64,000 nucleotides of DNA from Laetmonice hystrix (GCA_965235115.1 OZ249439.1:21452001-21516000), one strand, 5' to 3'. Counted from the first letter of the stretch, positions 3,201 through 31,186 are shown. The notes: generated from the sequence alone by a model not told the origin. Numbers and translations are program-made.

Positions 3201-6200
3201 TAAGCAATGACCACATTAATGGCAAAACATATTTTGATGCGTTCGGCGATAGGGCTATAGATACTCCAGAGACTTCAAGTAAAGAAAACCACTAATGTAC
3301 TTAGGAATTCGTTGTTGCAAACTATGACGTCACTTGATCTTTTTTCAGTACACTCCGTTTATTAAAGGAAAAATCACTTACTCGGGGATTTGCATAGAGC
3401 TTCTGGATTTCATTTCGAGGGCCCTGAACTTTACGTGAGTATAGTAGGCCTCTTCCTGCACCGCGATTTGTCCACGATTAATTCAACAGTTGATTTCTTG
3501 TTCCATCAAGTGCCGCTGAAAGTCAAACATCTTGTCGATAGGGTGTTTGTGATGGACAGGTAATTTCTCCAACCAGGTTTATTGTACATGAACAATAGTT
3601 TACAAAAGTTAATCCTTCTTGCAGGTGCAAATATGTGTACAGTGTGGACCGGAAATTTGGAGTATTGAAATCTGATGGCAAGTGGAACGGGCTCGTTGGC
3701 ATGATGCAACGCAAGGTAGGCCTGCAGCAATCAGCCGTGTTCGGGCTCGTGGCCCCATGTACGCCTTATAATGCCCTCAACTGGGTTACCAGGGTACGGG
3801 GCGAGGGCCGGGGGGGGGGGGGGGTCGTGGGAGTATTTCCAGGATTCAGTCACTAGTCGGACAAACAGTTTTACCCGAGCCTCCTCCTCGGCCCCCTCCC
3901 ATTAACGTGAGTTGAAACTTCAAGGGGTAGGCATATGCATGGAAACAATAGCGCGAGTAGATCTACGCCCCTGGTTACAGTTCAACGCTGTGTTTTTGAG
4001 AACAGGGGCGAAGAGTACAATAATATCTAACTTTGTGATATTGCAGGAGGTTGACATGATCGTGACAGGGTTGACGATCATAGCGTCCCGGGAGACAGTG
4101 GTAGACTTTACCGTGCCATTCTGGCAGGAGGAGTCGGTTGTCGTCCTCAACACCCCACCAGAGGGCAGCAGCTCGTGGCTGTATCTTTTTAAACCATTAC
4201 AGGTAATGTGTTAAATTTTCAGCTCAAGATATTTTGCTCTGAATTTCTGGAATCTGTAGGATGGGGAAAGCTTGACCTCTGATTAATATCTTACTGTGTT
4301 CACAGGGAACCGTCTGGTTGACGATTGGCATGTCGATAGGTGTCGCCACTGTCGCCTTATTCTTGGTTGAGCGCTTTCTGCCCATGACGTCAGGAGCAGG
4401 TCCTCGGAAACGCGTGTTATCTTTAGAACAAAGTCTGTGGTGTACAATATCAGCGTTTCTTAAACAAGGTAGCTAGGCCTAATTAATGTACAAACATATA
4501 TGTCATGAGCAAGAAATTATTCTCAACATCGGCTGAAGTCACTGGAAATAGGCCAACTGAACTTTATTTATTCTTTTACCGTGTAGGTCTGAAGGTCTTT
4601 CCGGGCTATTCGTCGGGGAGTGTGATTGTTGTCAGTATATGGTTCTGCTGCCTCGTGGTCGCAGCGACATATAGCGGCAATTTCATCGCGTCACTGACTG
4701 CGGTGCACACCCTGTCACTGTCAACAATAACTGACTTGGCGGACGATCCCAGTTACACAATTATTCTGAATGGTGGCGGTGTTCAACGTTTACTGTTACA
4801 GGCATGAACTCTTGAATTCTTTAGAATAGTTTCTACGGAAGACCGGTAGTGCCACACGATTATATTGTCTGAAATTTTCTCTCGGGCGGCCGCCAGATAA
4901 GTTATGTGGTTTATGATTATGGCGGCCGCCACAAAATGTGACGGCTGCCAGACAATTAAAAGAAAATGATTCCCCCAGTCGGTACATGGCCAGGCACATG
5001 CACATGCCGTGGATTTTTAGGCACTTTAGAAAAGATTTGAACACGATTGGTCACAAATCGTCAGGATCGGTCCGCTCGCTTGCTAGCAGACAGCAGCATG
5101 CGCATGCGCAAAGAGAGATAGACTGGAAATATAAGACACTGTGACGTCAACGGGCTTTCGGACAGTACCACAATGGCGGTGTTGCTGAAGCGGGTGATTT
5201 TTATGGAAATAGGTATCATGTTCGACATATGAATTCTGGGAAGAGGGGGGGGGGGATTTATTTTCAGACACTAAGTACTGTGGAAAGTTAGGCCTAAAGT
5301 ATAGCTGCGGTTAAAATGATTCTTAGACCTTAAATTATCTGCGGCCGCCAGATAAGTTTTCTGCCAGATAAGTTATCTGGCGGCCGCTAGATAATTTATG
5401 AACAGATATTATCAGCCGTATGGCACTAATGGTCTTCCGTAAGTTTCAGTGATACTGTTATACCATATAAATTCAATGTACCCCCTATACTATAGGCTTT
5501 AGTAGGCCTATTTCCAAATGCCCTTTCGGTTGTAGGCCTGTAGGACTATAGGGCGTCAGTTCCTGGACAGGTATAGCCGGCCCAGGCTTGGCTATAGGTC
5601 TAGAGAATAAAAGTAAGGGCACATGACGAAAAGATAGCAAATATAATAAATGTCCTCTTCATTAATTAAGTTAATTCGTTCCTATCGTTTAGGAATCCAA
5701 ACAAAGTGCGTTCAGCAAACTTTGGAAGAACATTATGTCAACATCAGACGTGTCCTTCGTGAAAACAACCAAGACCGGACTCAAGAAGATGTTAAACTTG
5801 ACAGACTCTCGAAAATACGCCGTCATTGGGGACTACTCATCCGTTCACACCAAGCTTGTCCGCGACTTCCCGGGCCGCTGTGACTGGCAGTATTTACAAG
5901 AGACATTTTTTCCTTCGGGGTTTGGAATAGGTCTACCAAACGGGTCCAGATATAAAAAATATTTTGATGAAGTGTGAGTAGGCCTATTACATAATCAGAG
6001 ATAACNNNNNNNNNNNNNNNNNNNNNNNNNNNNNNNNNNNNNNNNNNNNNNNNNNNNNNNNNNNNNNNNNNNNNNNNNNNNNNNNNNNNNNNNNNNNNNN
6101 NNNNNNNNNNNNNNNNNNNNNNNNNNNNNNNNNNNNNNNNNNNNNNNNNNNNNNNNNNNNNNNNNNNNNNNNNNNCATGTGATTCTGCGCCATTCAATTA

Positions 6201-8479: not shown

Positions 8480-9508
8480 ACGCAAAGACTACCCTCAGCC
8501 CCCTGACGGAGTGGACTGGTACTATAAGGCCAAGGTTCCTCCCGTGGCCACCAGAGCTGCATCACTATTTTGTGGTCTTCCCCAGAGGGCGCTACAATAA
8601 GTAGGTCGTAGGTTGGCTGAGCACTACGACTGCAACGATCGGTGGCTGTATGAGTCTTCTCGTCGGCCCCAGGTTCAACCGTTCTTTTTCTATTCTTTGG
8701 TGATGCACAGGGAGAGCCAGGTGTGTGGATCTGTCAAATTGAATCCTGCCACATAATTAGATTTCAGGTACCCCCGGTAAACAGTTGTCACGCCGCCACT
8801 GAGCAGGCTTACCACTGTACCAGCTTACCACCATTCGGCACCAGTCCAGTGTGGGCATTCTTTAGCACACTCTGAGACTCTCGCAGTGTCTCAGCTTTCA
8901 GTTTCAGCAACACGCTACTCTGAGCAAGTGACATGCTACCAAAACTATTAACTAGTCAAAATTTGAAACTTGAAATCGATTATTATTTTTCAAGTTTTTC
9001 TCTGTGCTGTGCATACTTTCCAACCTCTGGCCCAGTCTGGGGCGTGTGAAATATGGGGGGGGGGGGGGGGGGTCTGGTTGGCAGCCTCATCACATCAGGC
9101 ACGTGTTTCAGGACATCTGGGGCTTTCTCTGGTGTATTTTTGGATCATCTTTATCCCTTCAGCTTTCAGGGGCCTATGCAGTCCAAACCCCTGGCTATTA
9201 TTAACTTAGAGGCACAGCTTGTCATTTTACCTGTGGTAGGACTTTATTTCTATCCTTGAGAGGTCCCTGTATATTACATACCAGTACCGTACATATGAAG
9301 TTGGTTCTTGACTTCTTGTTGATTATTCGTGGTGGCTGTCGATGGTCCAACCACTGGTTGTATCAAGGTACTGTTCACACTCACATGTATTCAAGTATTG
9401 GTGTAGGCTCCCTATGCCTAATAGTCGTACTTTACGACAAGTTATATTTTTACCATTTTGTTTTTGTCTTCCAGAATTTCTAGCTCTTGATGTTCCTTGG
9501 AAGCACTG

Positions 9509-12500
9509 ATGTTGAAGCGCAGTAACATCGCCATGTTGGTTTCAGTTCAGGCTATTATTTTACTGGTGCAGTTCTTCATCTTCTACCCCTGCCTTCAGGG
9601 GGCTTCATCAGAGGGCATCGAGAGGGTCCAGTCTCCAGTGAAACACGGCCGAGTGAAACGCAGCTTACGAGCTGAAAAGGATCAGGCTCCCAAGCCATTT
9701 GCTGTTCGTGCACAAAACGTTCTTGTCAAAGGAACCCTCCTTGACAAGCCAGCACCAGAACGTTACGAACCAACATGGGAGTCTCTGGAGAGGCGGCCAA
9801 TACCGCAGTGGTATGATGACGCAAAGATTGGAATCTTCATCCATTGGGGTGTGTTCTCCGTGCCAAGTTTTGTTGGAGTTGGTACAAACGGCCTGGCAGA
9901 GTGGTTTTGGTATTATTGGCGTACAGGAGAGGAGTCAGGAGTTTTTCACACCAAGGGAGCTATTGAAAGTGTGAAGAAGTTTGTAAAGGAAAATTACCCA
10001 CCAGATTTCCGATATGCTGACCTGGCTTCACAGTTCACCGCAGAATTCTTCGACCCAGCTCACTGGGCAGACATCTTTCAGAGTTCTGGCGCAAAGTAAG
10101 TGCATCAGAACTGTCTAATTTGATTTTTCTACCCCTCACTGTTGATTATGTATACTGTATCATGTATGGCATTGATGTTCTGATGTGGTTACAGGTATGT
10201 AGTTCTCACGTCAAAACATCATGATGGCTATGCACTGTGGCCGTCCAAGAAGTCCTGGAACTGGAATTCTATGGATGTTGGCCCACATAGAGACCTAGTA
10301 GGTAAGTGTATGTGTGACAAGTCATTCTTTCAGATTTATCTATGGACATTCTACGTAACAAACTATTTTGAAGCATGGCCCATTAATGATGCTTTTTTAA
10401 TAATCTAAAGGTGACCTTGGAAAGGCTATACGATCGAAGACAAACCTCCACTATGGCCTTTATCACTCCATATTTGAGTGGTACAACCCCACTTACCTGG
10501 AAGATGAGAAAAGTGGCTTCACAACGCAGAACTATGTTAAGGTAAGTAGTTGATTGTTTGGGTTTTCTCAATCTTAATCTCCCTGGTATTCCAGGCTGCC
10601 CCAGCATGGTCACTGCAGTTAAATTCATATTTCATATTTAACATATTTCAGTTTTGAGCATTTCAGTCAGCCATATGCCAGCAGCCATCAGCAGGTTTTA
10701 AACTTGGCGACATACCGCACCTGATTGACCCATACTGTTCTCCACTGTGGCAGGACTTAGAACAAGCTGTGGATTTTTGTTTTAGAACAAGCTTCATCCA
10801 GAGTTGAAGGACCTGGTTGTGACTTACAAACCTGACATTGTCTGGGCAGATGGTGACTGGGTGGCCCCCTGCAAGTACTTTAACTGTACCGAGTTCCTGG
10901 CCTGGCTCTACAATGACAGGTAAATATTAGAGGAGTTTTTCACTTCTATTGCTGCCTTACTACCCAACATCACAATATTACGGTAAAAATCAGTTCTTTG
11001 GTGAGCAAATCTAAGAACAGTGAACATTGATACTTGATGACGATGGTAAGTTTGGCAACTCTGTATGTCAGTTGAAGGAAAAAGTAGGCCAGCAATACGT
11101 GAAAAATCTTTGAAAGGCATTTCACAGCAATTTGGTAGTTTACTAAACCTGAGTTTCTTAGCACCCTTCTGAAAATAGTGAAATTAGGGTAACTTCCCTC
11201 CAGCTGTGGCATTCTATGAAATAAAATGCCCTTGAATGAAGTTTGCCTACATGTATAGAAAAGATGTTATGCTGGCTGACATTTGTTTTCTAGTCCAGTG
11301 AAGGATACAGTGGTGACCAATGACAGGTGGGGGAAGGAGGTATCGTGTCATCATGGTGGTTACCTTACCTGTAGCGATCGATACAACCCAGGTAATAAGA
11401 TCTTTTTCTCTCTTTTTTTACTCCTATTTGATTGTTGGTATCTGGGCAGAGTCATACATGGAAACTGTCGCTGTTTGTGCCAATGTGCTTAAGTTGTAAG
11501 CTGGTTATTATTTTCTAAGGTAAAAAGCAGGCGAGAAAGTGGGAAAACTGTATGACGATTGATCGTGAGTCGTGGGGATACCGACGTAATGCTGTCCTGA
11601 AGGATTACTACACCATGGAGGGACTACTTGCACTGCTGGCAGAAACCATCAGGTAGAGACGTTATATTGATAATAAAATCTAGGCTGCATGTATTGGCAG
11701 ATGGATGACGGAATGTAGTGAAAACCCGTGGGGAGTTAGGCCTGTAATGCACAGGTCACATTAATTGGAACACAAGCGCTAATAATGTTCTAACTCTTTT
11801 TTTCGCTGTGAAGATGGCCTTAGATGTAGAGATGGCATAAAACCATCAATACTCACTCATGTTCTGACAGACAATCGAGTCAGAAATCTTGTGTTAGAGC
11901 TGAGATTGGACATCCAGAGTTCCGATGTGATTTAAGAATTGTTAGTTAAGTGTGGGAATGTTTTAGGTGTAGGTATAGGCCAGACAGGTGTACAATGACA
12001 TTTGATGAGGGGAAATAATTATGTTAGTTTGATTTCAAACTGTTGGCTTTCGGAAGATTGCATCATGTTAAATGTGTGGTGAAAAGATATCGTTGTTCCT
12101 CTCTTTTTCTTCTCAGCTATGGCGGGAACCTGTTGATGAACATAGGCCCCACAGCAGATGGCCGCATCTTGCCGATATATGAGGAGCGTTTCGGACAGAT
12201 GGGCAGCTGGTTAAAGGTCAATGGAGAGGGTATCTACGGCACACACATGTGGCACACTCCCAAAGATACGGCCTCGCAGAAAGTCTAGTAAGTAATGATA
12301 ATAAATTATTGTTTGAATTTGCATAGATCGATGAACATATTAGGGTTTCAGGAGAAATGTAGTTTTTGGTAAAGATAATAAAATAAAGGAAAGAGAACTA
12401 GACTGGTTGAGATCTTGATTTGTCATGATAATAAATTACATACATAGTGGAAAAAATAAAAACTTGATCTTTACAAACCTTGATCGAAAATAATGGAAGT

Positions 12501-12906
12501 TATAGTAAATTATAAAGAGACTCCGTTATTACCATAAAACCGAGAGTATAAGCTGGCACCTCAGTTATATGCTTGAGTGATATAGGCTAATAGTTACATT
12601 GACTGATGTTTATTTTGCTCCAGCTACACAGCAAAGACTGCATCCGACCTTGCTGGAGAGGTGACAGTCTATGCCATTCTCCTGGAGTGGCCCAAGGGAG
12701 ACGTTCTGGAGTTGGCCACGCCCACCCCACAGAACAACACTGTGGTCACGTGGTTGGGGTACAGTCGGGGCGCCATCTCGTGGAAGAAAGGAGCCAATGG
12801 CGGCATGGTTCTCAACCTGCCCAAGGTGTCACTGTCAGAGGTGCCATGTCTGTGGGCCTGGGTGTTCAAACTGACTGGGCTCCACAACTCTGATGTTCAC
12901 TCATAA
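9509..12906 (+). CDS. Alpha-L-fucosidase (GH29, FUCA-like) paralog A, predicted type II membrane anchor
   Basis: Exons 9509-10095, 10195-10301, 10411-10541, 10786-10919, 11294-11391, 11520-11652, 12117-12287, 12624-12906, all GT-AG and in phase. Motifs [24 protein letters not shown], nucleophile [30 protein letters not shown]. In-frame TGA upstream of ATG 9509. Confidence 0.96.
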
Positions 12907-16345: not shown

Positions 16346-18283
16346 TTACTCTTTACTCTTCTCGCCATTAGGTTTGTCATCATGTAAAATACTTTCAACA
16401 GTGTCAATGAACACTCTCCTATCTGGTGTTCTGATAAAGTTATCATCCAGGCTGATGTGCCTTATTCCCTTCAGACATGAGATTCTCTGACTCGCGTACA
16501 AGAAGAGTTGATTTACTCTCTGTACGAGTCGACCCAGCAACTTTCCTTTAGTTCGCTCTTCTATGAAGAGAACAATCGTAATGCGTTCTAGTTTAAGTAT
16601 GTTGTCTTTAAGTTGGGATATTTCATCTATCCGCTTTGTCATAATCGCAATAAGTAAATTGACCAAGCCCATTGAAATAACGACGAGGAGAAGTATATAT
16701 ATGATCATAGCAACGTGAGGTGTTGACGCACAGGAGAAGAAGACATCCTTGGGCGACATGACAGCGAGCATGAGAAGGAATGTTCCGTACAGCGCACCCC
16801 CCATCTTGCCCAGATTGTTCAAGTCCACACAGCTCGTGTTGCTCAGTGTTGTTAGATTCTGTGCACAGGCCGGGATATCGACGTGTAGTAGGAACAGTGA
16901 CAACGCAAAGGCAAGGAACACGAGAAATATAGTAAGGTAATATATAAGGGCGTCGACCATGAGTTTTTGTATGATAATGAGCAAGTGGCCTATGTTCTTC
17001 TGTACTTGGAGGAAGAATAAGAGGGAGAGTGGGCAAAGGAGCCCACCAATTAGAAAGCAGAACCGAATATATTTTGGAAATTTGCATCTGAATGGGTAGG
17101 AGATTCCGGTAAATAGAACGGCGATACAGAAGAATAACTGAATCACCCTGTAGACAAACGTGAACGTGACGGGGAAGTGGCCTTTCAAGATGTCTCGCGA
17201 TGAACTCAGGGACTCTTGTAAGTTGTTCTTGATGTGTATAAGCTCAACGCTCAGGAATAATGCTGCAAACACCGTGGCGAAGGTGAACACCACATAGGAC
17301 ATGGATCCAGTGTTGACAAATTGTAAAAGAGATTTGGCATATAGGATGACGAGAAGTGCCCATATAACTACGACACAGACTAGTCGATGGTAAAGGGATT
17401 GAAACTTCAGCTCAATCCAGGTATTAAAAGGTTCTCTAGAAAGTAACGAACTTCTTTGTGCACGGCAAAGCTGGCCTTCGTCCATCCTTGTTAAGTGATA
17501 CAGAAGTGACCTGTGGACCTTGGCATTAGGCCCCTCAAAGTCAGTGACGTCATAGCGAGCCATTCCTGTTGACCCATAAGTGGTGCTGCTCACCTTATAC
17601 ACGCCTGGCGTGGAGATGAGGGCTTGAAGCATTTCTGGCAAGCCGAGTTCTGCAGCCAACTCTACGGGTATCCTCCTCTTAAAGTTGGGGGTTCCTAAAA
17701 CTGATTTCCAAAGACATTTATCATCCACACTTTCACGTAAGTATTGGTACATTGAAAGAGATCTGTTTGGAATTTCTTCTGAAAGCCGAACCAGAACGTG
17801 TATGACATTTTCTCCAGCTGAATCGCGTGTCTGGAGAGTCGCCCCATGGAGTAGAACTGTCCTCACCACCAAGCGGTTTCCACTGGCGCATGCCATAGCC
17901 AGCGGTAGTTCAATGCGTCCTGCACTTTGGGTTGCCGTAAGAAGACTGTGGTCGACGGTTGGAGCGTGAGACATTTCCTCGTTCACAGACTTCTGTTCCT
18001 CGGGGGACAGGTCATCCAAAATGTAACTGAGGTAGGCGTGACCTGGAAATGAAACCGCCAAGTTCTCCGGCATTGTTGTTGGTGTGTTGAAAACCAGCTT
18101 AATAAGGTCTCTGTTCTGTATTTGATCCAAGATGGTAGAAAGTTCATGATAATCGTCTTTAAATAGAGCTGTGTGTAGAGGGGTAAGCACCATTGGAATT
18201 TCGTTACTTTTAGACAGCTGAAAGTAAAACTTTTCTAGGTATAATCTACATGCTTTCAATTCGAGGGTTTTAGACAGGCCCAT
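16346..18283 (-). CDS. TRPV-like channel, copy 1 (645 aa, intronless ORF)
   Basis: Ankyrin repeats (LPLAMACASGN, GENVIHVLV, PVELAAELG), TRPV-type linker (TYGSTGMARYDVTDFE), six hydrophobic segments, S6/TRP helix VNLLIAIMTKR..ILKLERITIVLFIEER. A splice acceptor 1 nt upstream of the ATG means the true N-terminus may be longer. Confidence 0.9.
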   Translation of the reverse strand: MGLSKTLELKACRLYLEKFYFQLSKSNEIPMVLTPLHTALFKDDYHELSTILDQIQNRDLIKLVFNTPTTMPENLAVSFPGHAYLSYILDDLSPEEQKSVNEEMSHAPTVDHSLLTATQSAGRIELPLAMACASGNRLVVRTVLLHGATLQTRDSAGENVIHVLVRLSEEIPNRSLSMYQYLRESVDDKCLWKSVLGTPNFKRRIPVELAAELGLPEMLQALISTPGVYKVSSTTYGSTGMARYDVTDFEGPNAKVHRSLLYHLTRMDEGQLCRAQRSSLLSREPFNTWIELKFQSLYHRLVCVVVIWALLVILYAKSLLQFVNTGSMSYVVFTFATVFAALFLSVELIHIKNNLQESLSSSRDILKGHFPVTFTFVYRVIQLFFCIAVLFTGISYPFRCKFPKYIRFCFLIGGLLCPLSLLFFLQVQKNIGHLLIIIQKLMVDALIYYLTIFLVFLAFALSLFLLHVDIPACAQNLTTLSNTSCVDLNNLGKMGGALYGTFLLMLAVMSPKDVFFSCASTPHVAMIIYILLLVVISMGLVNLLIAIMTKRIDEISQLKDNILKLERITIVLFIEERTKGKLLGRLVQRVNQLFLYASQRISCLKGIRHISLDDNFIRTPDRRVFIDTVESILHDDKPNGEKSKE

Positions 18284-21164: not shown

Positions 21165-23063
21165 TTAGTCATCATGTAAAATACTTTCAACAGTATCAAT
21201 AAAAACTCGCCCATCTGGTGTTCTGATAAAATAATCAGCTTCATCTCGTCTCTTTGGAAGTATGATTCGTTTGTTGGAGTACGCCAAGACTCGAGTAACT
21301 GCCCGCAAAAATAGCGCCAGCAGCTTTGTTTTCGTTCGCTCTTCTATGTAAAGGACAATCGAGATGCGTTCTAGTTTGAGGATGTTGTCTTTAAGTGTGG
21401 ATATTTCTTCTATCCTTTTAGTCATAATTGCGATAAGTAAATTTACTAAACCCATGGAAATAACGACCAATAGAAATACATACAATATCATAGCAAGGAG
21501 AGGCAGTGAGGAGCATGAGAAGAAGACATCCTTGGGCGACATGACAGCGAGCATGAGAAGGAATGTTCCGTACAGCGCACCCCCAATGTTGCCCAGATTG
21601 TTCATCTCCACACAGCTCGTGTTGCTCAATGTTGTTAGATTCTGTGGACAGGCCGGGATATCGACGTGTAGTAGGAACAGTGACAACGCAAAGGCAAGGA
21701 ACACGAGAAATATAGTAAGGTAATATATAAGGGCGTCGACCATGAGTTTTTGTATGATAATGAGCAAGTGGCCTATGTTCTTCTGTACTTGGAGGAAGAA
21801 TAAGAAGGAGAGTGGGCACAGGAACCCACCAATCACGAAGCAGGCCAGAAGAAATCTGGGACATTTACATTTGAATGGCATGGAGACAACAGTAAATATA
21901 ATAGTCACACAGAAAAATAACTGAATCATCCTGTATATGAACGTGAACGTGACGGGGATGTGGCCATTCAGGATGTCTTGCGTTGACTCAAGGAACTCCC
22001 TCACATTGACCTTGACGTGGCAAACTTCAACAATCAAAAATAATGCTGGCAAAATCATGGCCAAGAAGTAGAATGCAAATGGCACATCACCAGTATTAAC
22101 AAACAGTACAAAACATACACCATAAAGGATGACGAGAAGTACCCATGTAACTATGATACAGACTAGTTGATGGTAAAGGGATTGAAACTTCAGTTCAATC
22201 CAGGTATTAAAAGGTTCTCTAGAAAGTAACGAACTTCTTTGTGCACGGCAAAGCTGGCCTTCGTCCATCCTTGTTAAGTGATACAGAAGGGACCGGTGGA
22301 TCTTGGCATTAGGCCCCTCAAAGTCAGTGACGTCATAGCGAGCCATTCCTTTTGACCCATAAGTGGTGCTGCTCACCTTATACACGCCTGGCGTGGAGAT
22401 GAGGGCTTGAAGCATTTCTGGCAAGCCGAGTTCTGCAGCCAACTCTACGGGTATCCTCCTCTTAAAGTTGGGGGTTCCCAAAACTGATTTCCAAAGAGAT
22501 TTGTCATCCACACTTTCACGTAAGTATTGATACATTGAAAGAGATCTGTTTGGAATTTCTTCTGAAAGCCGAACCAGAACGTGTATGACATTTTCTCCAG
22601 CTGAATCGCGTGTCTGGAGAGTCGCCCCATGGAGTAGAACTGTCCTCACCACCAAGCGGTTTCCACTGGCGCATGCCATAGCCAGCGGTAGTTCAATGCG
22701 TCCTATACCTTGGGTTGACGTAAGAAGACTGTGGTCGACGGTTGGAGCGTGAGAAAGTTCCTCGTTCACAGACGTCTGTTCCTCAGGGGACAGGTCATCC
22801 AAAATGTAACTGAGGTAGGCGTGACCTGCAAATGGTACCAAGGTCGTTTGGAGAGTTGTTGATGTGTTCAACACCAATTCGATAAGGTCTTTGTTCTGTA
22901 TCTGCTCCAAGATGGTAGTAAGTTCGTCATATTCGCCTCTTAACAAAGCTGTGTGTAGAGGGGTAAGCACCATTGGAATATTGTTACTTTTAGACAGCTG
23001 GGAGTAAAATTTCTCCAGGTATAATCTACACGCTTTCCACTGGAGGGCTTTACACAGACTCAT
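21165..23063 (-). CDS. TRPV-like channel, copy 2 (632 aa, intronless ORF)
   Basis: Colinear paralog of 16346-18283 with the same ankyrin, six-TM and TRP-helix motifs. Confidence 0.9.
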   Translation of the reverse strand: MSLCKALQWKACRLYLEKFYSQLSKSNNIPMVLTPLHTALLRGEYDELTTILEQIQNKDLIELVLNTSTTLQTTLVPFAGHAYLSYILDDLSPEEQTSVNEELSHAPTVDHSLLTSTQGIGRIELPLAMACASGNRLVVRTVLLHGATLQTRDSAGENVIHVLVRLSEEIPNRSLSMYQYLRESVDDKSLWKSVLGTPNFKRRIPVELAAELGLPEMLQALISTPGVYKVSSTTYGSKGMARYDVTDFEGPNAKIHRSLLYHLTRMDEGQLCRAQRSSLLSREPFNTWIELKFQSLYHQLVCIIVTWVLLVILYGVCFVLFVNTGDVPFAFYFLAMILPALFLIVEVCHVKVNVREFLESTQDILNGHIPVTFTFIYRMIQLFFCVTIIFTVVSMPFKCKCPRFLLACFVIGGFLCPLSFLFFLQVQKNIGHLLIIIQKLMVDALIYYLTIFLVFLAFALSLFLLHVDIPACPQNLTTLSNTSCVEMNNLGNIGGALYGTFLLMLAVMSPKDVFFSCSSLPLLAMILYVFLLVVISMGLVNLLIAIMTKRIEEISTLKDNILKLERISIVLYIEERTKTKLLALFLRAVTRVLAYSNKRIILPKRRDEADYFIRTPDGRVFIDTVESILHDD

Positions 23064-27020: not shown

Positions 27021-30000
27021 CTACATATTTTCCAACTTGGTGATTTTAAAAACCCAGCCCCATTGGCAGGGCATTGCAGCTAGAGATATTTTAGGCAGAG
27101 AAAGAGTCATGCCTCTGTCTGTCTCTTTCTTCCAAAGGATGGAATTTGCCGGGGCACTATAGCCCAGCCATGTCACCTCTGTGTGCATGGTTGGCGTTGG
27201 TATCCCAAGTTTAAGGACGTCATTCTTGGGCCATTTTAGGACAATGGCATACACCACTCCATAGGTTTCATCCTTGGGCTGTTTGCTTGTGTAACTGTTG
27301 ATAAAACACAAGACTCCATTTTTGAAAATGTCAATGATAACCACTGAGTGAAGAAAGTGGAAACTCTGCATGCACATATTTATATGACATTAGCCTGATG
27401 CTCCTTCAGATATGTTGTCTAAAGTGGATTGCTCTAATTTCAGGAATAGCAAAGAATACAGGTCATTTTTTTCACAGCACTGACACAATTAATAGTGCTG
27501 ATATACTTACTATACATCACTGTTGAGAGAATCTTTGGGAGTGTGCCACATGTCTGTGCCATAGATACCCTCTCCATTGACCTTCAACCAGCTGCCCATC
27601 TGTCTCAAACGCTCCTCGTATATTGGCAAGATGCGGCCATCTGCTGTGGGTCCTATGTTCATCAACAGGTTCCCGCCATAACTGGAAATAAATATCTATT
27701 GAGTCAATAAACAAATTCACACAATCCAATATCTTTTTTTCATTTTGAACATCATTTCATCACTTAGAGCATTACAGCTTAAAAATGTACGCATATAATC
27801 TATGCTAACAAAAAAATAATGTTATTTTCACTTTTCCTTTCTATGCTCCTTGATTCATGTACAATAAGGTGAAATATGATGCAGGCCTACAGAATGTTTG
27901 TACATTTCTCTGGCTAGCACTTAGCTTATACAGGCAAGTCTAGATACCTATTTAACTTTACTAATCTGAAAGCCATACACATGCACTGACCTGACAGTTT
28001 GTGCCAGAAGTAAAATTAGTCCCTCCACAGTGTAATAATCCTTCAAGACAGCATTACGTCGGTAACCCCACGACTCACGATCAATTGTCATGCAATTCTC
28101 CCATTTACGTGCTTGCTTTTTCTCTGAAAAAGAAATTACAATTAAGACCTGTCAATTGAAGCAGTGAAATTGAGAAGGAGCAAATGGAAAATGCATTCTA
28201 GGCATAGAGCTTGCTGGGAGGTGACAAGGTCTTACCTGGGTTGTACCTGTCTTTACAGGTGAGGTATCCACCATGTTTACATGAGACGTCTGTCCCCCAC
28301 CGGTCATTGGTCACTACACTGTCCTTCACTGGACTGCAACCATGTCATATATAAGGTCAGAGGCAAACTACACAAAATATGGTTCCACCTACAGATATTT
28401 ACATCTAACATAATATTGTCTATTACAGAGACAATAAAGCTGCTAAATTAGAAACATGTGGAGACCTGTCATTGTAGAGCCAAGCCAAAAACTCGGTACA
28501 ATTCCAGTAGCTGCATGGAGCCTCAAAGTGCCCATCCGACCATACAACTTCAGGTTTGTAGGTATTAACGAGGTCCAGTAACTCGGGCATCATCTTTTCC
28601 TGATGAATACAGGGAAAACACATGGCATGAATAACCTGACTCCTGAATGTAAAATGCAATTCACAACTATGAACAAGACGAAACATAGAGTTAACCTTTG
28701 TGCCAAAAGATGGCAACCTTCAATAACCTAAATTTTTGTCCCAAAAATATATATATTTATTAGAAAACTAAAACATGGGGAACATTTGAGTTTCCCATGA
28801 AAACTCATCACAATGATCAGTCTCACTTAAACCGACATATTTTTTAAAAGAACGTTTAATACTTTCAAATACTCTAGTATAAAACACACTCAGTTCTCCC
28901 TTGATTTATTCTATCAGTAAATGGGTGGGTGGGTATTTGGGGTTTTACGCCAGGGTCATATCCCGGCGGTGAAGATGATGATGAAAGTCAGTTTTTCTTG
29001 GTGGAGGAAACCGGAATACCCGGAGGAAACCACCGACCTTCAGGAAGGAACTGACTGACAAACCTTTCACATATGTATGCAGCCCAGGCCGGGGATCGAA
29101 CCCAGACCATAGAGGTGTGAGGCGATGGTCCTAGGTGTCATGAGCCAACACCTTAGACCACTCAGCCACCCAAGGCCCCTTCTATCAGTAAAGCTTTTCT
29201 TTAATCAGTGCATTATAATTTATATAAGTAAAAAACCAGCTTTCTGTGCTTACTCTGACATACTGCTGTGTCTTGAATCCACTGAGTTTGTCACTGTTGT
29301 AAAGAGGGTTGAACCACTCATAGAGTGAGTAGTAAAGACCATATTTCAATCCAGCGTCTCGTACTGCTGCACCAAGCTCTCCTGCATGAAACAAATTACA
29401 CCTTAACATGCCCTTCAGCTACATTTATCTAAGATTCTTTCAATAATACATTAATTTCAAGTCTTCAATATGTACAAAGTTTCATTTCAATCTAAGTCCT
29501 GAGGGTGATAAAGACTGTTAATCTCAGAATGGCCTTTCTCAGTCAAATGTAGACCATGATATCCCAGGCCTTTCGTTTTGAAAAATCTCCACTCTTTTAT
29601 TTTAGAGACTTCCCTGGCTTGACACCTACCCACAAGATCACGGTGTGGCCCAACATCTGCTGCATTCCAGTTCCATGACTTCTTCGATGGCCAAAGTGTG
29701 TATCCTTCATGATGCTTGGATGTCAGTATGACATACCTGTATGTATAAAAAATGTTCACACCCTTCATCATGCCAGCGACATAGCACAATGTGTTCCTGA
29801 TAGAAATTGTCAACTTAGGAACTCAGTATACAACTATAAATCTGAGTGAAACAATTTGTACAGTTCTTAATAGGCAGGAAACTGAACATTGTTTTGACAG
29901 TTTTGTACAAGTTAAGAGTTCTTTGAAAAATAAAAAAAATCCAGGTCGGGAACATTTCTCAGGTCGGGAGGGGATGCTAAACAAGCAATTTTTTTTATGT

Positions 30001-30741
30001 GACTTTATGTATATGTTTAATTTTAAACGTCCTCGATCACTTTATATGATAAATCTTGAAGGCTTACCATTTTAGCCAGCTGTCATCTAAAAAAAATTTA
30101 ATTTAACAAAAAAGGCCACACCACTTTTGAATATTCCTCATACCAGAAACCAGCCATTTTTTTTGGGGGGGGGGGGGGGCAGTGTATACTTAGCTCAATA
30201 GCTGGCAATTGGCAGGGTTACAATTAGGTTTACTCTTTGACAAAGACTCACTTTGCTCCAGAGTCTTTGAATATTTCTGCCCAGTGCTGTGGATCAAACA
30301 TTTCTGCTCGGAGCTTGGGTGCAAAATCTGTGTACCGCACTTTTTGGTTGTACGTCTTATCAACAAAGTCTTTAACACTTTTAATGGCAGGAGTACATTT
30401 CTGAAGGAACATCTGAAACCTTTGCTGATGATAATTGTCAATGGGCTGCACAAACTCTTCGTTCTTCCAGTAGAACCAGAACCATTCAGCCAAACCCTTC
30501 GTTCCAACTCCAACATAACTGGGAACAGAGTAGACACCCCAGTGGATGAAGATTCCTATTTTGGCACTGTCATACCACTCTGGTATAGGCCGGGAATCAA
30601 GTGATTTCCAGTTGGATTGGTAACGAACCAAATCTACCTGCTGCTGTGAGTGCACTTTGACATCACTTTTCACAGGTGATTTGTGGGAAAGCTTATCATC
30701 GTGTGCAACACCTTGTGCACCCACTGGCACTGGTGCAACAA

Positions 30742-30799
<58 letters not shown>

Positions 30800-31186
30800 G
30801 AGCTGCTGCTGGAGCTGCTGCTGGGGCTGCTGCTGGAGCTGCTGCTGCTGAGCCTTCTCCAGTTTTTCTTCTTGCTCTCTCTGTAGCATCTGCGCCATAT
30901 TCTGCTCCTGTTGTAGCTGCGCCTGTCTCTGCAACACCTCCCGTTCCTTCTCATCTTCTTGTTGTTTCAAATTTTGACGGGGTGCGCCCCCACCGGCGTC
31001 CAGGCGGGTACCTTGGTGATGGGATTGGTGGTCATGTTCCGAGGCACGGAACACACGCAGGATGGTCGACTCTGGCGCCGCCTGCCAGCAAGGGTAGAAA
31101 ACGAACACCTGCAGCGCCACGAACACCACCTGGAAAACTACAAAGCTCCAGAAATAGTTTCTCCTGTGTGCACGTAACTGGGGCAT
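27021..31186 (-). CDS. Alpha-L-fucosidase (GH29, FUCA-like) paralog B, predicted type II anchor and polyQ stem
   Basis: Exons (minus) 31186-30252, 29736-29630, 29381-29254, 28599-28466, 28333-28236, 28123-27991, 27681-27511, 27294-27021. Intron positions match paralog A; exons 2, 4, 5, 6 and 7 have identical lengths. Motifs [39 protein letters not shown]. Confidence 0.96.
28922..29179 (-). mobile_element. Full-length tRNA-derived SINE with V/Meta-like core
   Basis: Minus strand: A box (GGTGGCTGAGTGG), B box (GGTTCGATCCC), core GGTTTCCTCCGGGTATTCCGGTTTCCTCC, (ACCC)n tail; perfect 13-bp TSD TTCTATCAGTAAA at 28909-28921 and 29180-29192. Confidence 0.92.
30743..30796 (-). repeat. Pure (CAG)18 coding tract within a longer Q-rich region of fucosidase B
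   Basis: (CTG)18 on plus; with the adjacent CAA gives 19 consecutive Gln. Confidence 0.97.

What the first reader, a model, noticed from the sequence alone, without database searches (positions are those of the whole stretch)
9509..9780. Fucosidase A: type II signal anchor, stem and furin site
Seen: MLKRSN, hydrophobic [24 protein letters not shown], ~55-aa stem with RVKR|S, then RYEPTWESL where GH29 begins. The TM motif Qx6QxFxFYPCxQ is shared with paralog B despite unrelated stems. Established: FUCA1/FUCA2 have cleavable signal peptides and short leaders; basic tail/TM/stem is the layout of Golgi glycosyltransferases and mannosidases; RxKR is the furin consensus. Inference: a Golgi or surface enzyme that can be shed.
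Basis: partly seen in the sequence, partly recalled or inferred. Interest (0 to 1): 0.7.

Follow-up and report, generated by a model that had tools for sequence, protein, structure and literature searches.

The report
Membrane-anchored fucosidase with conserved anchor
This marine invertebrate gene encodes a fucose-removing enzyme that probably stays tethered to a membrane by a strongly conserved N-terminal helix, unlike the soluble lysosomal form, and carries a conserved site where a protease could release it; none of this has been tested at the bench.

Summary
The ATG at 9509 opens an intact 8-exon, 547-aa GH29 alpha-L-fucosidase (A). Its layout is basic tip MLKRSN, a 23-residue hydrophobic segment ending in FYPC, a 55-aa stem with RVKR|S, then the catalytic domain from RYEPTW. 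Paralog B (659 aa, minus strand) shares the hydrophobic motif but has an unrelated poly-Q stem.

New here:
- The motif is not private to this pair. A gapless block R-x5-F-x2-FQ-x2-F-x3-Q-x3-FYPC recurs in 22 GH29 sequences, including a bivalve, an octopus and a brachiopod.
- The block is almost as conserved as the catalytic domain (44% vs 53% identity). Stems score 20% and ordinary signal peptides 11%.
- Its conserved residues lie on one helical face.
- The same genome has two canonical paralogs with 18-aa signal peptides.
- RxKR is kept in all three A-type orthologs and in none of 19 other clade members.
- It sits in a stretch that AlphaFold2 models as disordered.

Best reading (about 0.6): a type II signal-anchored fucosidase of an old lophotrochozoan lineage, shed by a furin-like convertase in the A subtype. 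Main rival (about 0.25): a long cleavable signal peptide followed by a furin-removed propeptide. Golgi versus cell surface cannot be decided. I found no published description. This is a new variant of a known kind, and all evidence is computational.

The parts
9488..9490 (+). In-frame TGA stop upstream of the start codon
   Evidence: Read directly from the sequence. It fixes ATG 9509 as the first in-frame start whatever the 5' exon structure.
9509..9526 (+). Cytosolic tip MLKRSN (net +2, plus the free amino terminus)
   Evidence: Orthologs read MSFRRR and MFTRRR. An Arg 24 residues before the Cys is present in 69% of clade members.
9527..9595 (+). Hydrophobic segment I7-L29, the predicted signal anchor / transmembrane helix, with Q14 and Q21
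   Evidence: Best 19-residue Kyte-Doolittle mean is 2.53. The uncharged hydrophobic run is 26 residues, against a median of 15 in canonical GH29 leaders. The block aligns without gaps across 22 sequences. The ortholog model is helical over residues 2-22 with pLDDT 80-87.
9581..9592 (+). FYPC motif at the lumenal end of the helix
   Evidence: Frequencies in 18 non-redundant clade members: F 89%, Y 83%, P 83%, C 89%.
9596..9760 (+). 55-aa basic stem/linker (11 K+R, 6 D+E, no N-glycosylation sequon)
   Evidence: Stems across the clade are 12-189 aa long and about 20% identical. The equivalent region of the ortholog has pLDDT below 50.
9650..9661 (+). RVKR, followed by Ser at 9662-9664: candidate proprotein-convertase (furin-type) cleavage site
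   Evidence: RxKR occurs 17-23 residues after the Cys in A, P0151 (RSKR|A) and P0002 (RVKR|D), and in 0 of 19 other clade stems. It appears in 5.7% of composition-preserving shuffles of the A stem.
9761..10095 (+). Start of the GH29 catalytic domain within exon 1 (RYEPTWESL onward)
   Evidence: PF01120, E = 2.1e-35, residues 81-196.
10195..12906 (+). Exons 2-8 of fucosidase A (10195-10301, 10411-10541, 10786-10919, 11294-11391, 11520-11652, 12117-12287, 12624-12906)
   Evidence: Gene model with GT-AG at every junction and an open 1644-nt CDS. PF16757 matches the C-terminus. The motifs WADGDW and KWENC are present.
27021..31186 (-). Paralog B, 8 exons, 659 aa. Exon 1 (31186-30252) encodes the basic tip [10 protein letters not shown], the same TM motif (FYPC at 31099-31088) and a 155-aa Q/E-rich poly-Q stem.
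   Evidence: PF01120 starts at residue 180. B is 71% identical to A over the catalytic domain.

Best explanation
Fucosidase A is a single-pass type II membrane protein with the N-terminus in the cytosol. The segment I7-L29 acts as an uncleaved signal anchor. A flexible 55-aa stem holds an active GH29 alpha-L-fucosidase domain in the lumen of the secretory pathway or at the cell surface. A belongs to an old lophotrochozoan GH29 lineage defined by a sequence-conserved transmembrane helix, R-x5-F-x2-FQ-x2-F-x3-Q-x3-FYPC. The invariant residues form one stripe along the helix, which suggests a specific intramembrane contact such as self-association, a partner protein or sorting. In the A subtype, a conserved RxKR about 20 residues outside the membrane lets a furin-like convertase release the soluble enzyme in the late Golgi, endosomes or at the surface. 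Shown here: the anatomy, the conservation and the contrast with the canonical paralogs. Inferred: non-cleavage by signal peptidase, the topology, use of the RVKR site, and the compartment.
For: 1. Layout and intact gene.
2. Positive-inside: the N flank is +2 (+3 with the amino terminus) and the 15-aa C flank is -1. The basic tip is conserved in orthologs, one of them seen in a transcript contig.
3. There are 20-22 residues between the last basic residue and the helix-breaking Pro27. This is longer than the 18-19-residue 50% cleavage threshold measured for human signal peptidase (bioRxiv 10.64898/2026.09.20.752496; see also PMC13578380). It is also longer than the canonical GH29 leaders, median 15.
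4. The hydrophobic block is 44% identical across the clade without gaps. The catalytic domain is 53%, stems 20% and canonical signal peptides 11%. A versus its orthologs gives 70% in the TM, equal to the catalytic domain.
5. The best-conserved positions F-18, Q-14, F-11, Q-7, F-3, C0 and A+4 fall within an 80-degree arc of a helical wheel.
6. In 11 of 18 non-redundant members, the only small-x-small site after the Cys is followed by Pro at +1. That is the substitution used experimentally to block signal-peptidase cleavage.
7. The same genome has two canonical GH29 genes with 18-aa signal peptides that abut the catalytic domain directly.
8. RxKR is conserved in 3 of 3 A-type orthologs although stem identity is only 9-26%, and it is absent from 19 other stems.
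9. The stem of the ortholog is modelled as disordered, pLDDT below 50 over residues 26-66.
10. The genome encodes several proprotein-convertase P-domains.
11. There is precedent: the type II Golgi proteins GP73 and GPP130 are shed by furin/PC7 at stem sites close to the membrane (PMC3448521 and PMC12250082).
Against: No signal-peptide or topology predictor, and no experiment, could be run.
- A has a formally acceptable signal-peptidase site (Pro at -5, Leu at -3, Gly at -1: PCLQG|A).
- The three A-type sequences lack the +1 Pro found in most of the clade, so the A subtype may have become cleavable.
- Two Gln residues make the segment only marginally hydrophobic. A simple sum on the Hessa scale gives about -0.3 kcal/mol for A and +1.3 for B (scale values recalled from memory, so approximate).
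- RxKR arises by chance in 5.7% of shuffles of the stem, and three orthologs are few.
- No RNA data exist for this species.
- The tree does not resolve the motif-bearing sequences as one clade.
Confidence: 0.6

Rival explanations
1. Residues 1-31 are an unusually long but cleavable signal peptide. The next roughly 20 residues, ending in RVKR, are a propeptide removed by a convertase. The mature enzyme is soluble: secreted or lysosomal, and made as a pro-fucosidase.
For: The c-region looks classical, with Pro at -5 and small or neutral residues at -3 and -1. All three A-type sequences have lost the +1 Pro that blocks the homologous site in most clade members. Natural h-regions can behave as shorter than they look. 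The conserved RxKR fits a propeptide boundary equally well.
Against: The hydrophobic block is conserved as strongly as the catalytic domain and on one helical face, which is not expected of a discarded signal peptide. Its length exceeds the measured cleavage threshold. Canonical paralogs in the same genome manage with 18-aa leaders.
Confidence: 0.25
2. A is a signal-anchored membrane fucosidase, but RVKR is not used. The enzyme stays tethered, or is released by another route such as SPPL3-type intramembrane cleavage or a metalloprotease sheddase.
For: 19 other clade members, including paralog B, have the anchor without an RxKR. Release of Golgi enzymes by intramembrane proteolysis is widespread (PMC8918473, listed; abstract only read).
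Against: RxKR is kept at the same distance from the membrane in all three A-type orthologs, while the rest of the stem drifts to 9-26% identity. The site lies in a predicted disordered region.
Confidence: 0.1
3. The N-terminal extension is an annotation artefact: a wrong start codon or a wrong first exon.
For: The Kozak context of ATG 9509 is weak (C at -3). An overlapping upstream ORF starts at 9490. M9 has a better context. There is no RNA for this species.
Against: There is an in-frame stop 6 codons upstream and a continuous ORF into GH29. A relative's transcript contig encodes the same layout, with a basic tip and an upstream stop. NCBI models of Solemya, Octopus and Lingula share the layout. 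Starting at M9 would still leave the whole hydrophobic block.
Confidence: 0.03

Closest known systems
Vertebrate FUCA1 / FUCA2 (GH29A lysosomal and plasma alpha-L-fucosidases; human FUCA1 structure 7PLS)
   Same: Same fold and family. The ortholog P0151 aligns to 7PLS over residues 70-524 at E = 1.7e-149, and the WxDGxW and KWExC catalytic motifs are kept. The C-terminal Fucosidase_C domain is present.
   Different: FUCA1/2, and this genome's own two canonical paralogs, have a short cleavable signal peptide directly abutting the catalytic domain. A and B instead have a conserved 23-residue hydrophobic helix plus a 55-155-aa stem. They also keep a longer loop after HWGVxSVP, which the canonical animal clade has shortened. 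In the tree they fall outside the canonical animal clade, which has SH-aLRT 92.
GP73 (GOLM1), GPP130 and CASC4: type II Golgi proteins shed by furin/PC7
   Same: Short cytosolic tip, one N-terminal transmembrane span, and a convertase site in the lumenal stem close to the membrane that releases a soluble ectodomain (PMC3448521 and PMC12250082). B's Q/E-rich helical stem also recalls their coiled-coil stems.
   Different: Those proteins have no enzyme domain and share no sequence similarity. Cleavage here is inferred, not shown.
Insect FDL ('fused lobes') GH20 hexosaminidase
   Same: A member of an otherwise lysosomal, soluble glycosidase family that carries a transmembrane domain. It resides in the Golgi and secretory pathway and trims N-glycans during biosynthesis (PMC4339880). 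It is the best functional analogy for a tethered GH29.
   Different: Different family (GH20) and a different sugar. A glycan-processing role for fucosidase A is a hypothesis only.
Membrane-associated sperm alpha-L-fucosidases of ascidians, bivalves and insects
   Same: A fucosidase held at a cell surface and used for binding fucosylated egg-coat glycans has long been described biochemically (PMC9265791, PMC3528131, PMC6718869).
   Different: The passages I read describe no membrane-spanning segment for those enzymes. No expression data link A or B to sperm.

Membership tests
GH29 alpha-L-fucosidase (Pfam PF01120 + PF16757) | Match to the family profile above the curated cut-off | tested here: met
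   PF01120 scores 123.2 bits for A exon 1 and 98.1 bits for B exon 1 (cut-off 25.2). PF16757 scores 66.2 bits (cut-off 25.6).
GH29 alpha-L-fucosidase (Pfam PF01120 + PF16757) | Catalytic nucleophile Asp (WxDG) and acid/base Glu (KWExC) conserved (residue roles from my knowledge of human FUCA1 and T. maritima work) | tested here: met
   A has WADGDW at 295 and KWENC at 359. B has WSDGHF at 410 and KWENC at 474. The ortholog aligns to 7PLS through both motifs.
GH29 alpha-L-fucosidase (Pfam PF01120 + PF16757) | Alpha-L-fucosidase activity | not testable with these tools
   Needs an enzyme assay.
Type II (signal-anchor) membrane protein | N-terminal hydrophobic segment of about 20 or more residues, with the more positive flank on the N side | tested here: met
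   I7-L29 is 23 residues. The N flank is +2/+3 and the C flank -1. A basic residue is conserved 24 positions before the Cys.
Type II (signal-anchor) membrane protein | The segment is not removed by signal peptidase | tested here: inconclusive
   The length (20-22 residues) exceeds the 18-19 threshold and the block is conserved like a functional domain. However, A has an acceptable PCLQG|A site and lacks the +1 Pro of most relatives. No predictor or experiment was available.
Type II (signal-anchor) membrane protein | Demonstrated membrane integration and N-in topology | not testable with these tools
   Needs carbonate extraction, protease protection or glycosylation mapping.
Proprotein-convertase (furin-type) substrate | R-X-K/R-R motif in a lumenal, accessible region | tested here: met
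   RVKR|S lies at residues 48-52. The equivalent region of the ortholog model is disordered, pLDDT below 50.
Proprotein-convertase (furin-type) substrate | Site conserved in orthologs beyond the background conservation of the region | tested here: met
   3 of 3 A-type orthologs keep RxKR at +17 to +23 from the Cys, with stem identity of 9-26%. None of 19 other clade stems has it.
Proprotein-convertase (furin-type) substrate | A convertase is present in the organism | tested here: met
   PF01483 P-domain matches over the cut-off at six or more places in the genome.
Proprotein-convertase (furin-type) substrate | Actual cleavage after R51 | not testable with these tools
   Needs mutagenesis, inhibitor treatment and N-terminal sequencing.
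Canonical FUCA1/FUCA2-type soluble fucosidase | Short cleavable signal peptide directly followed by the catalytic domain | tested here: not met
   A has 84 residues before the catalytic domain and B has 188. The genome's paralogs on contigs C1 and C12 do meet this feature, with 18-aa leaders followed by QYQPNW.

The most novel reading that the evidence does not exclude
The conserved polar-aromatic stripe of the transmembrane helix (F, Q, F, Q, F, C on one face) may be a dedicated intramembrane recognition or sorting module. It would define a previously unrecognised class of tethered fucosidases in lophotrochozoans. Two forms are possible. The first is a Golgi fucose-trimming enzyme that edits N-glycans during biosynthesis, analogous to insect FDL. 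The second is the molecular identity of the long-known membrane-bound sperm or cell-surface fucosidase. The A subtype would add regulated release by a convertase. A further possibility is a functional link to the two membrane-protein genes that A and B bracket.
Probability: 0.15. Interest if true: 0.75.

Novelty: new variant of a known kind. Interest (0 to 1): 0.5.

Why it matters
Animal GH29 fucosidases are treated as soluble lysosomal or plasma enzymes. A lineage tethered to the membrane, shared by brachiopods, molluscs and this (probably annelid) worm, points to fucose removal at another location: in the secretory pathway or at the cell surface. The anchor itself is conserved as strongly as the catalytic domain.

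This gives two old questions a concrete gene candidate. One is how invertebrate glycans lose or remodel fucose during biosynthesis. The other is what holds 'membrane-associated' fucosidase on gametes. The conserved one-faced Q/F/C transmembrane motif is also a testable example of a sequence-specific signal anchor. The A subtype offers a natural comparison of tethered and sheddable forms.

Tried and rejected
- A word-indexed homolog search restricted to residues 1-84 of exon 1 found nothing: 6 candidates, none scored. This reflects the length window and the E-value scale, not absence, because the exhaustive search found relatives.
- The sequencing-run search found only DNA runs of one sample and no RNA. 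Laying them confirmed genomic contigs that run through introns, with no splice joints. The only joint skips 57 bases within the intron between exons 6 and 7. There is one stem polymorphism at 9678. Expression and the transcript 5' end in this species are therefore untested.
- The genome-wide DNA pattern for QxFxFYPC gave three extra hits. All lie in tiny ORFs and the total is no higher than the reversed-pattern control, so they are chance.
- I considered the longer loop after HWGVxSVP as a derived insertion marking the clade. I rejected this because bacterial GH29s have even longer loops, so the canonical animal clade has a deletion instead.
- The Atlas look-up only returned GH29 clusters.
- A 10-kb flank around the ortholog P0002 showed only retroelement ORFs, so nothing can be said about conserved synteny.
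- Pfam did not confirm the neighbouring ORFs as TRP channels. It gave only sub-threshold ankyrin hits.
- I did not run a complex prediction for helix self-association, because I do not claim binding.
- The full-length spliced protein A could not be handed to the fold and search tools by reference. I used the ortholog P0151 for the structure model and the PDB alignment.

Full report
**Anatomy**

The window is eukaryotic DNA with GT-AG introns. From ATG 9509 an open frame runs to a GTAAGT donor at 10096. With seven further exons it gives a 1644-nt CDS of 547 aa, and every junction is canonical. An in-frame TGA lies six codons upstream.

The product has these parts:
- MLKRSN
- I7-L29 ([23 protein letters not shown])
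- a 55-aa basic stem with RVKR|S at residues 48-52
- the GH29 domain from residue 81-85, PF01120, E = 2e-35
- a Fucosidase_C domain at the C-terminus

The catalytic motifs WADGDW and KWENC are present. The ortholog P0151 aligns to human FUCA1 (7PLS) through both motifs at E = 1.7e-149.

Paralog B lies on the minus strand (31186-27021, 8 exons, 659 aa). It begins [10 protein letters not shown], carries the same Q-x6-Q-x-F-x-FYPC-x-Q motif, and has a 155-aa Q/E-rich stem with a long poly-Q run.

**Context in the genome**

A profile search of the whole 627-Mb assembly finds four GH29 genes. The two on contigs C1 and C12 start with MVAGVVLLVSLILPATLG and MVALVVLLVSLILPAAVS. Each is followed directly by QYQPNW, the start of the catalytic domain. 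These are ordinary FUCA-type genes with 18-aa signal peptides. A and B are additional, differently built paralogs.

**The hydrophobic block is a conserved domain, not a generic leader**

An exhaustive search with exon 1 and two indexed searches recovered GH29 proteins that align to A from residue 9 onward. When anchored on the Cys, 22 sequences align without a single gap from 24 residues upstream to 5 downstream. They include A, B, models from the bivalve Solemya velum, Octopus bimaculoides and the brachiopod Lingula anatina, and many unnamed contigs.

In 18 non-redundant members the residue frequencies are as follows:

| Position relative to Cys | Residue | Frequency |
|---|---|---|
| -24 | R | 69% |
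| -15 | F | 61% |
| -14 | Q (otherwise E) | 83% |
| -11 | F | 83% |
| -7 | Q | 94% |
| -3 | F | 89% |
| -2 | Y | 83% |
| -1 | P | 83% |
| 0 | C | 89% |
| +4 | A or S | 83% |
| +5 | P | 61% |

Mean pairwise identity of the 20-mer is 0.44. The first 100 catalytic residues give 0.53, the stems 0.20 even after optimised alignment, and right-anchored canonical signal peptides from the same phyla 0.11. A versus its two orthologs is 70% identical in the block, the same as in the catalytic domain.

On a 100-degree-per-residue wheel, F-18, Q-14, F-11, Q-7, F-3, C0 and A+4 fall within an 80-degree arc. The 23 residues between the conserved Arg and the Cys would span about 34 Å as a helix.

An AlphaFold2 model of ortholog P0151, built with a 45-sequence alignment, shows three regions:
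- a helix over residues 2-22, pLDDT 80-87
- a disordered stretch over residues 26-66, pLDDT below 50, which contains RSKR
- a confident GH29 domain from residue 70

In this genome the DNA pattern for QxFxFYPC occurs in real ORFs only in A and B.

**Anchor or signal peptide?**

Evidence for an anchor:
- The N flank is the more positive one.
- There are 20-22 residues between R4 and the helix-breaking Pro27. The 50% cleavage threshold reported for human signal peptidase is 18-19 residues (preprint; concept in PMC13578380). Canonical GH29 leaders have a median of 15.
- Sequence conservation on one face is not expected of a discarded peptide.
- In 11 of 18 members the only small-x-small site after the Cys (VNA, VSA, VRA, QAA and similar) is followed by Pro. 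This is the +1 substitution used experimentally to block cleavage.

Evidence against, for A specifically:
- A and its two orthologs lack that Pro.
- They have acceptable sites (PCLQG|A, FLSA|D, LLGA|Q).
- Two Gln residues lower the hydrophobicity of the segment (the scale was recalled from memory).

I put the anchor at roughly 0.65-0.7 for A, and higher for B and the rest of the clade.

**The dibasic site**

R-x-K-R lies 17-23 residues after the Cys in A (RVKR|S), in P0151 (RSKR|A) and in P0002 (RVKR|D). Their stems are otherwise only 9-26% identical. None of 19 other clade stems has the motif, and it arises in 5.7% of shuffles of the A stem.

The true N-termini of the two orthologs, read from their DNA, are MSFRRRII and MFTRRRC. 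One of them comes from an intronless 4-kb contig, which is presumably a transcript. The genome encodes several convertase P-domains.

Shedding of type II Golgi proteins by furin/PC7 at membrane-proximal stem sites is established for GP73 and GPP130. The site is therefore probably functional. It would serve either as a shedding site (main reading) or as a propeptide boundary (rival).

**Phylogeny**

I built a quick maximum-likelihood tree of 50 catalytic domains, rooted on three bacterial sequences. All motif-bearing sequences fall outside a canonical animal clade of 30 sequences (SH-aLRT 92). That canonical clade holds the signal-peptide forms from molluscs, annelids, echinoderms, vertebrates, arthropods and cnidarians.

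The motif-bearing sequences themselves are not resolved as one clade. A pairs with P0151 (support 89) and B groups with P0283 and P0285 (support 89), so the A/B duplication probably predates those species splits.

Two further points follow from other calls:
- The clade keeps a longer loop after HWGVxSVP. Bacteria also have it, and the canonical animal clade has shortened it.
- Other invertebrate GH29s carry unrelated N-terminal anchors and stems, in Mytilus, Priapulus, Branchiostoma and Glandiceps. Tethering of this enzyme seems to have arisen more than once.

**Literature**

Full-text searches found no description of a transmembrane or signal-anchored animal GH29. A survey of GH29 evolution does not mention membrane anchors (PMC6718869). 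The closest functional analogies are the Golgi-resident, membrane-bound FDL hexosaminidase of insects (PMC4339880) and the biochemically known sperm-surface fucosidases.

**Limits**

Everything here is computational. There are no RNA data for this species and no topology predictor was available. The compartment (Golgi or surface) is undetermined. My recollection that Phe-rich exoplasmic halves are typical of Golgi spans is only a hint. Earlier notes of this scan call the animal a marine, probably annelid, worm, and I did not verify that.

**Verdict**

The gene is a new variant of a known enzyme family, and the most notable feature is the phylum-spanning conservation of the anchor sequence.

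Noticed in passing
window 16346-18283 (-) and 21165-23063 (-): Two intronless paralogous ORFs of 645 and 632 aa with several hydrophobic segments lie between fucosidases A and B. Another first-reader note calls them TRPV-like. Pfam gave only sub-threshold ankyrin-repeat hits, so the channel identity is unconfirmed here.
   Followed up: partly
window about 30745-30860 (-), within exon 1 of paralog B: A long CAG/CAA run encodes a poly-Q tract of about 40 residues inside a Q/E-rich, probably helical stem. A B-type relative (P0011) also has a Q-rich stem, so the composition is conserved although the sequence is not.
   Followed up: partly
window 9490-9525 (+): An 11-codon upstream ORF starts at ATG 9490, runs out of frame across the main ATG 9509, and stops at 9523-9525. 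The main ATG has a weak Kozak context (C at -3), whereas M9 (9533) has G at -3.
   Followed up: no
window 31055-31044 (-); residues 43-46 of B: B and its relative P0011 both carry RVFR, a minimal RxxR motif, 11 residues after the Cys within a conserved STILRVFR stretch. P0155 lacks it.
   Followed up: partly
G000:C1:60896209-60903178 (-) and G000:C12:21402042-21407075 (+); loci L001, L002: Two canonical GH29 paralogs have near-identical first exons and 18-aa signal peptides.
   Followed up: partly
proteins P0087, P0127, P0130, P0137, P0148: A separate set of GH29 first-exon products has a signal peptide followed by 430-650 residues of extremely basic K/R/H/S-rich sequence before the catalytic domain. 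Their origin is unknown.
   Followed up: no
proteins P0318 (Mytilus), P0319 (Priapulus), P0298 (Branchiostoma), P0333 (Glandiceps), P0293/P0294: GH29 proteins inside the canonical clade have unrelated N-terminal hydrophobic anchors and 30-90-aa stems. This suggests repeated evolution of tethered fucosidases in invertebrates.
   Followed up: partly
window 9678: An A>T difference in one of three DNA runs of a single sample would change K57 to M in the stem. No differences were seen in the hydrophobic block or in RVKR.
   Followed up: no
window 6006-6175: A run of 170 N (assembly gap or masked stretch). I left it untouched.
   Followed up: no
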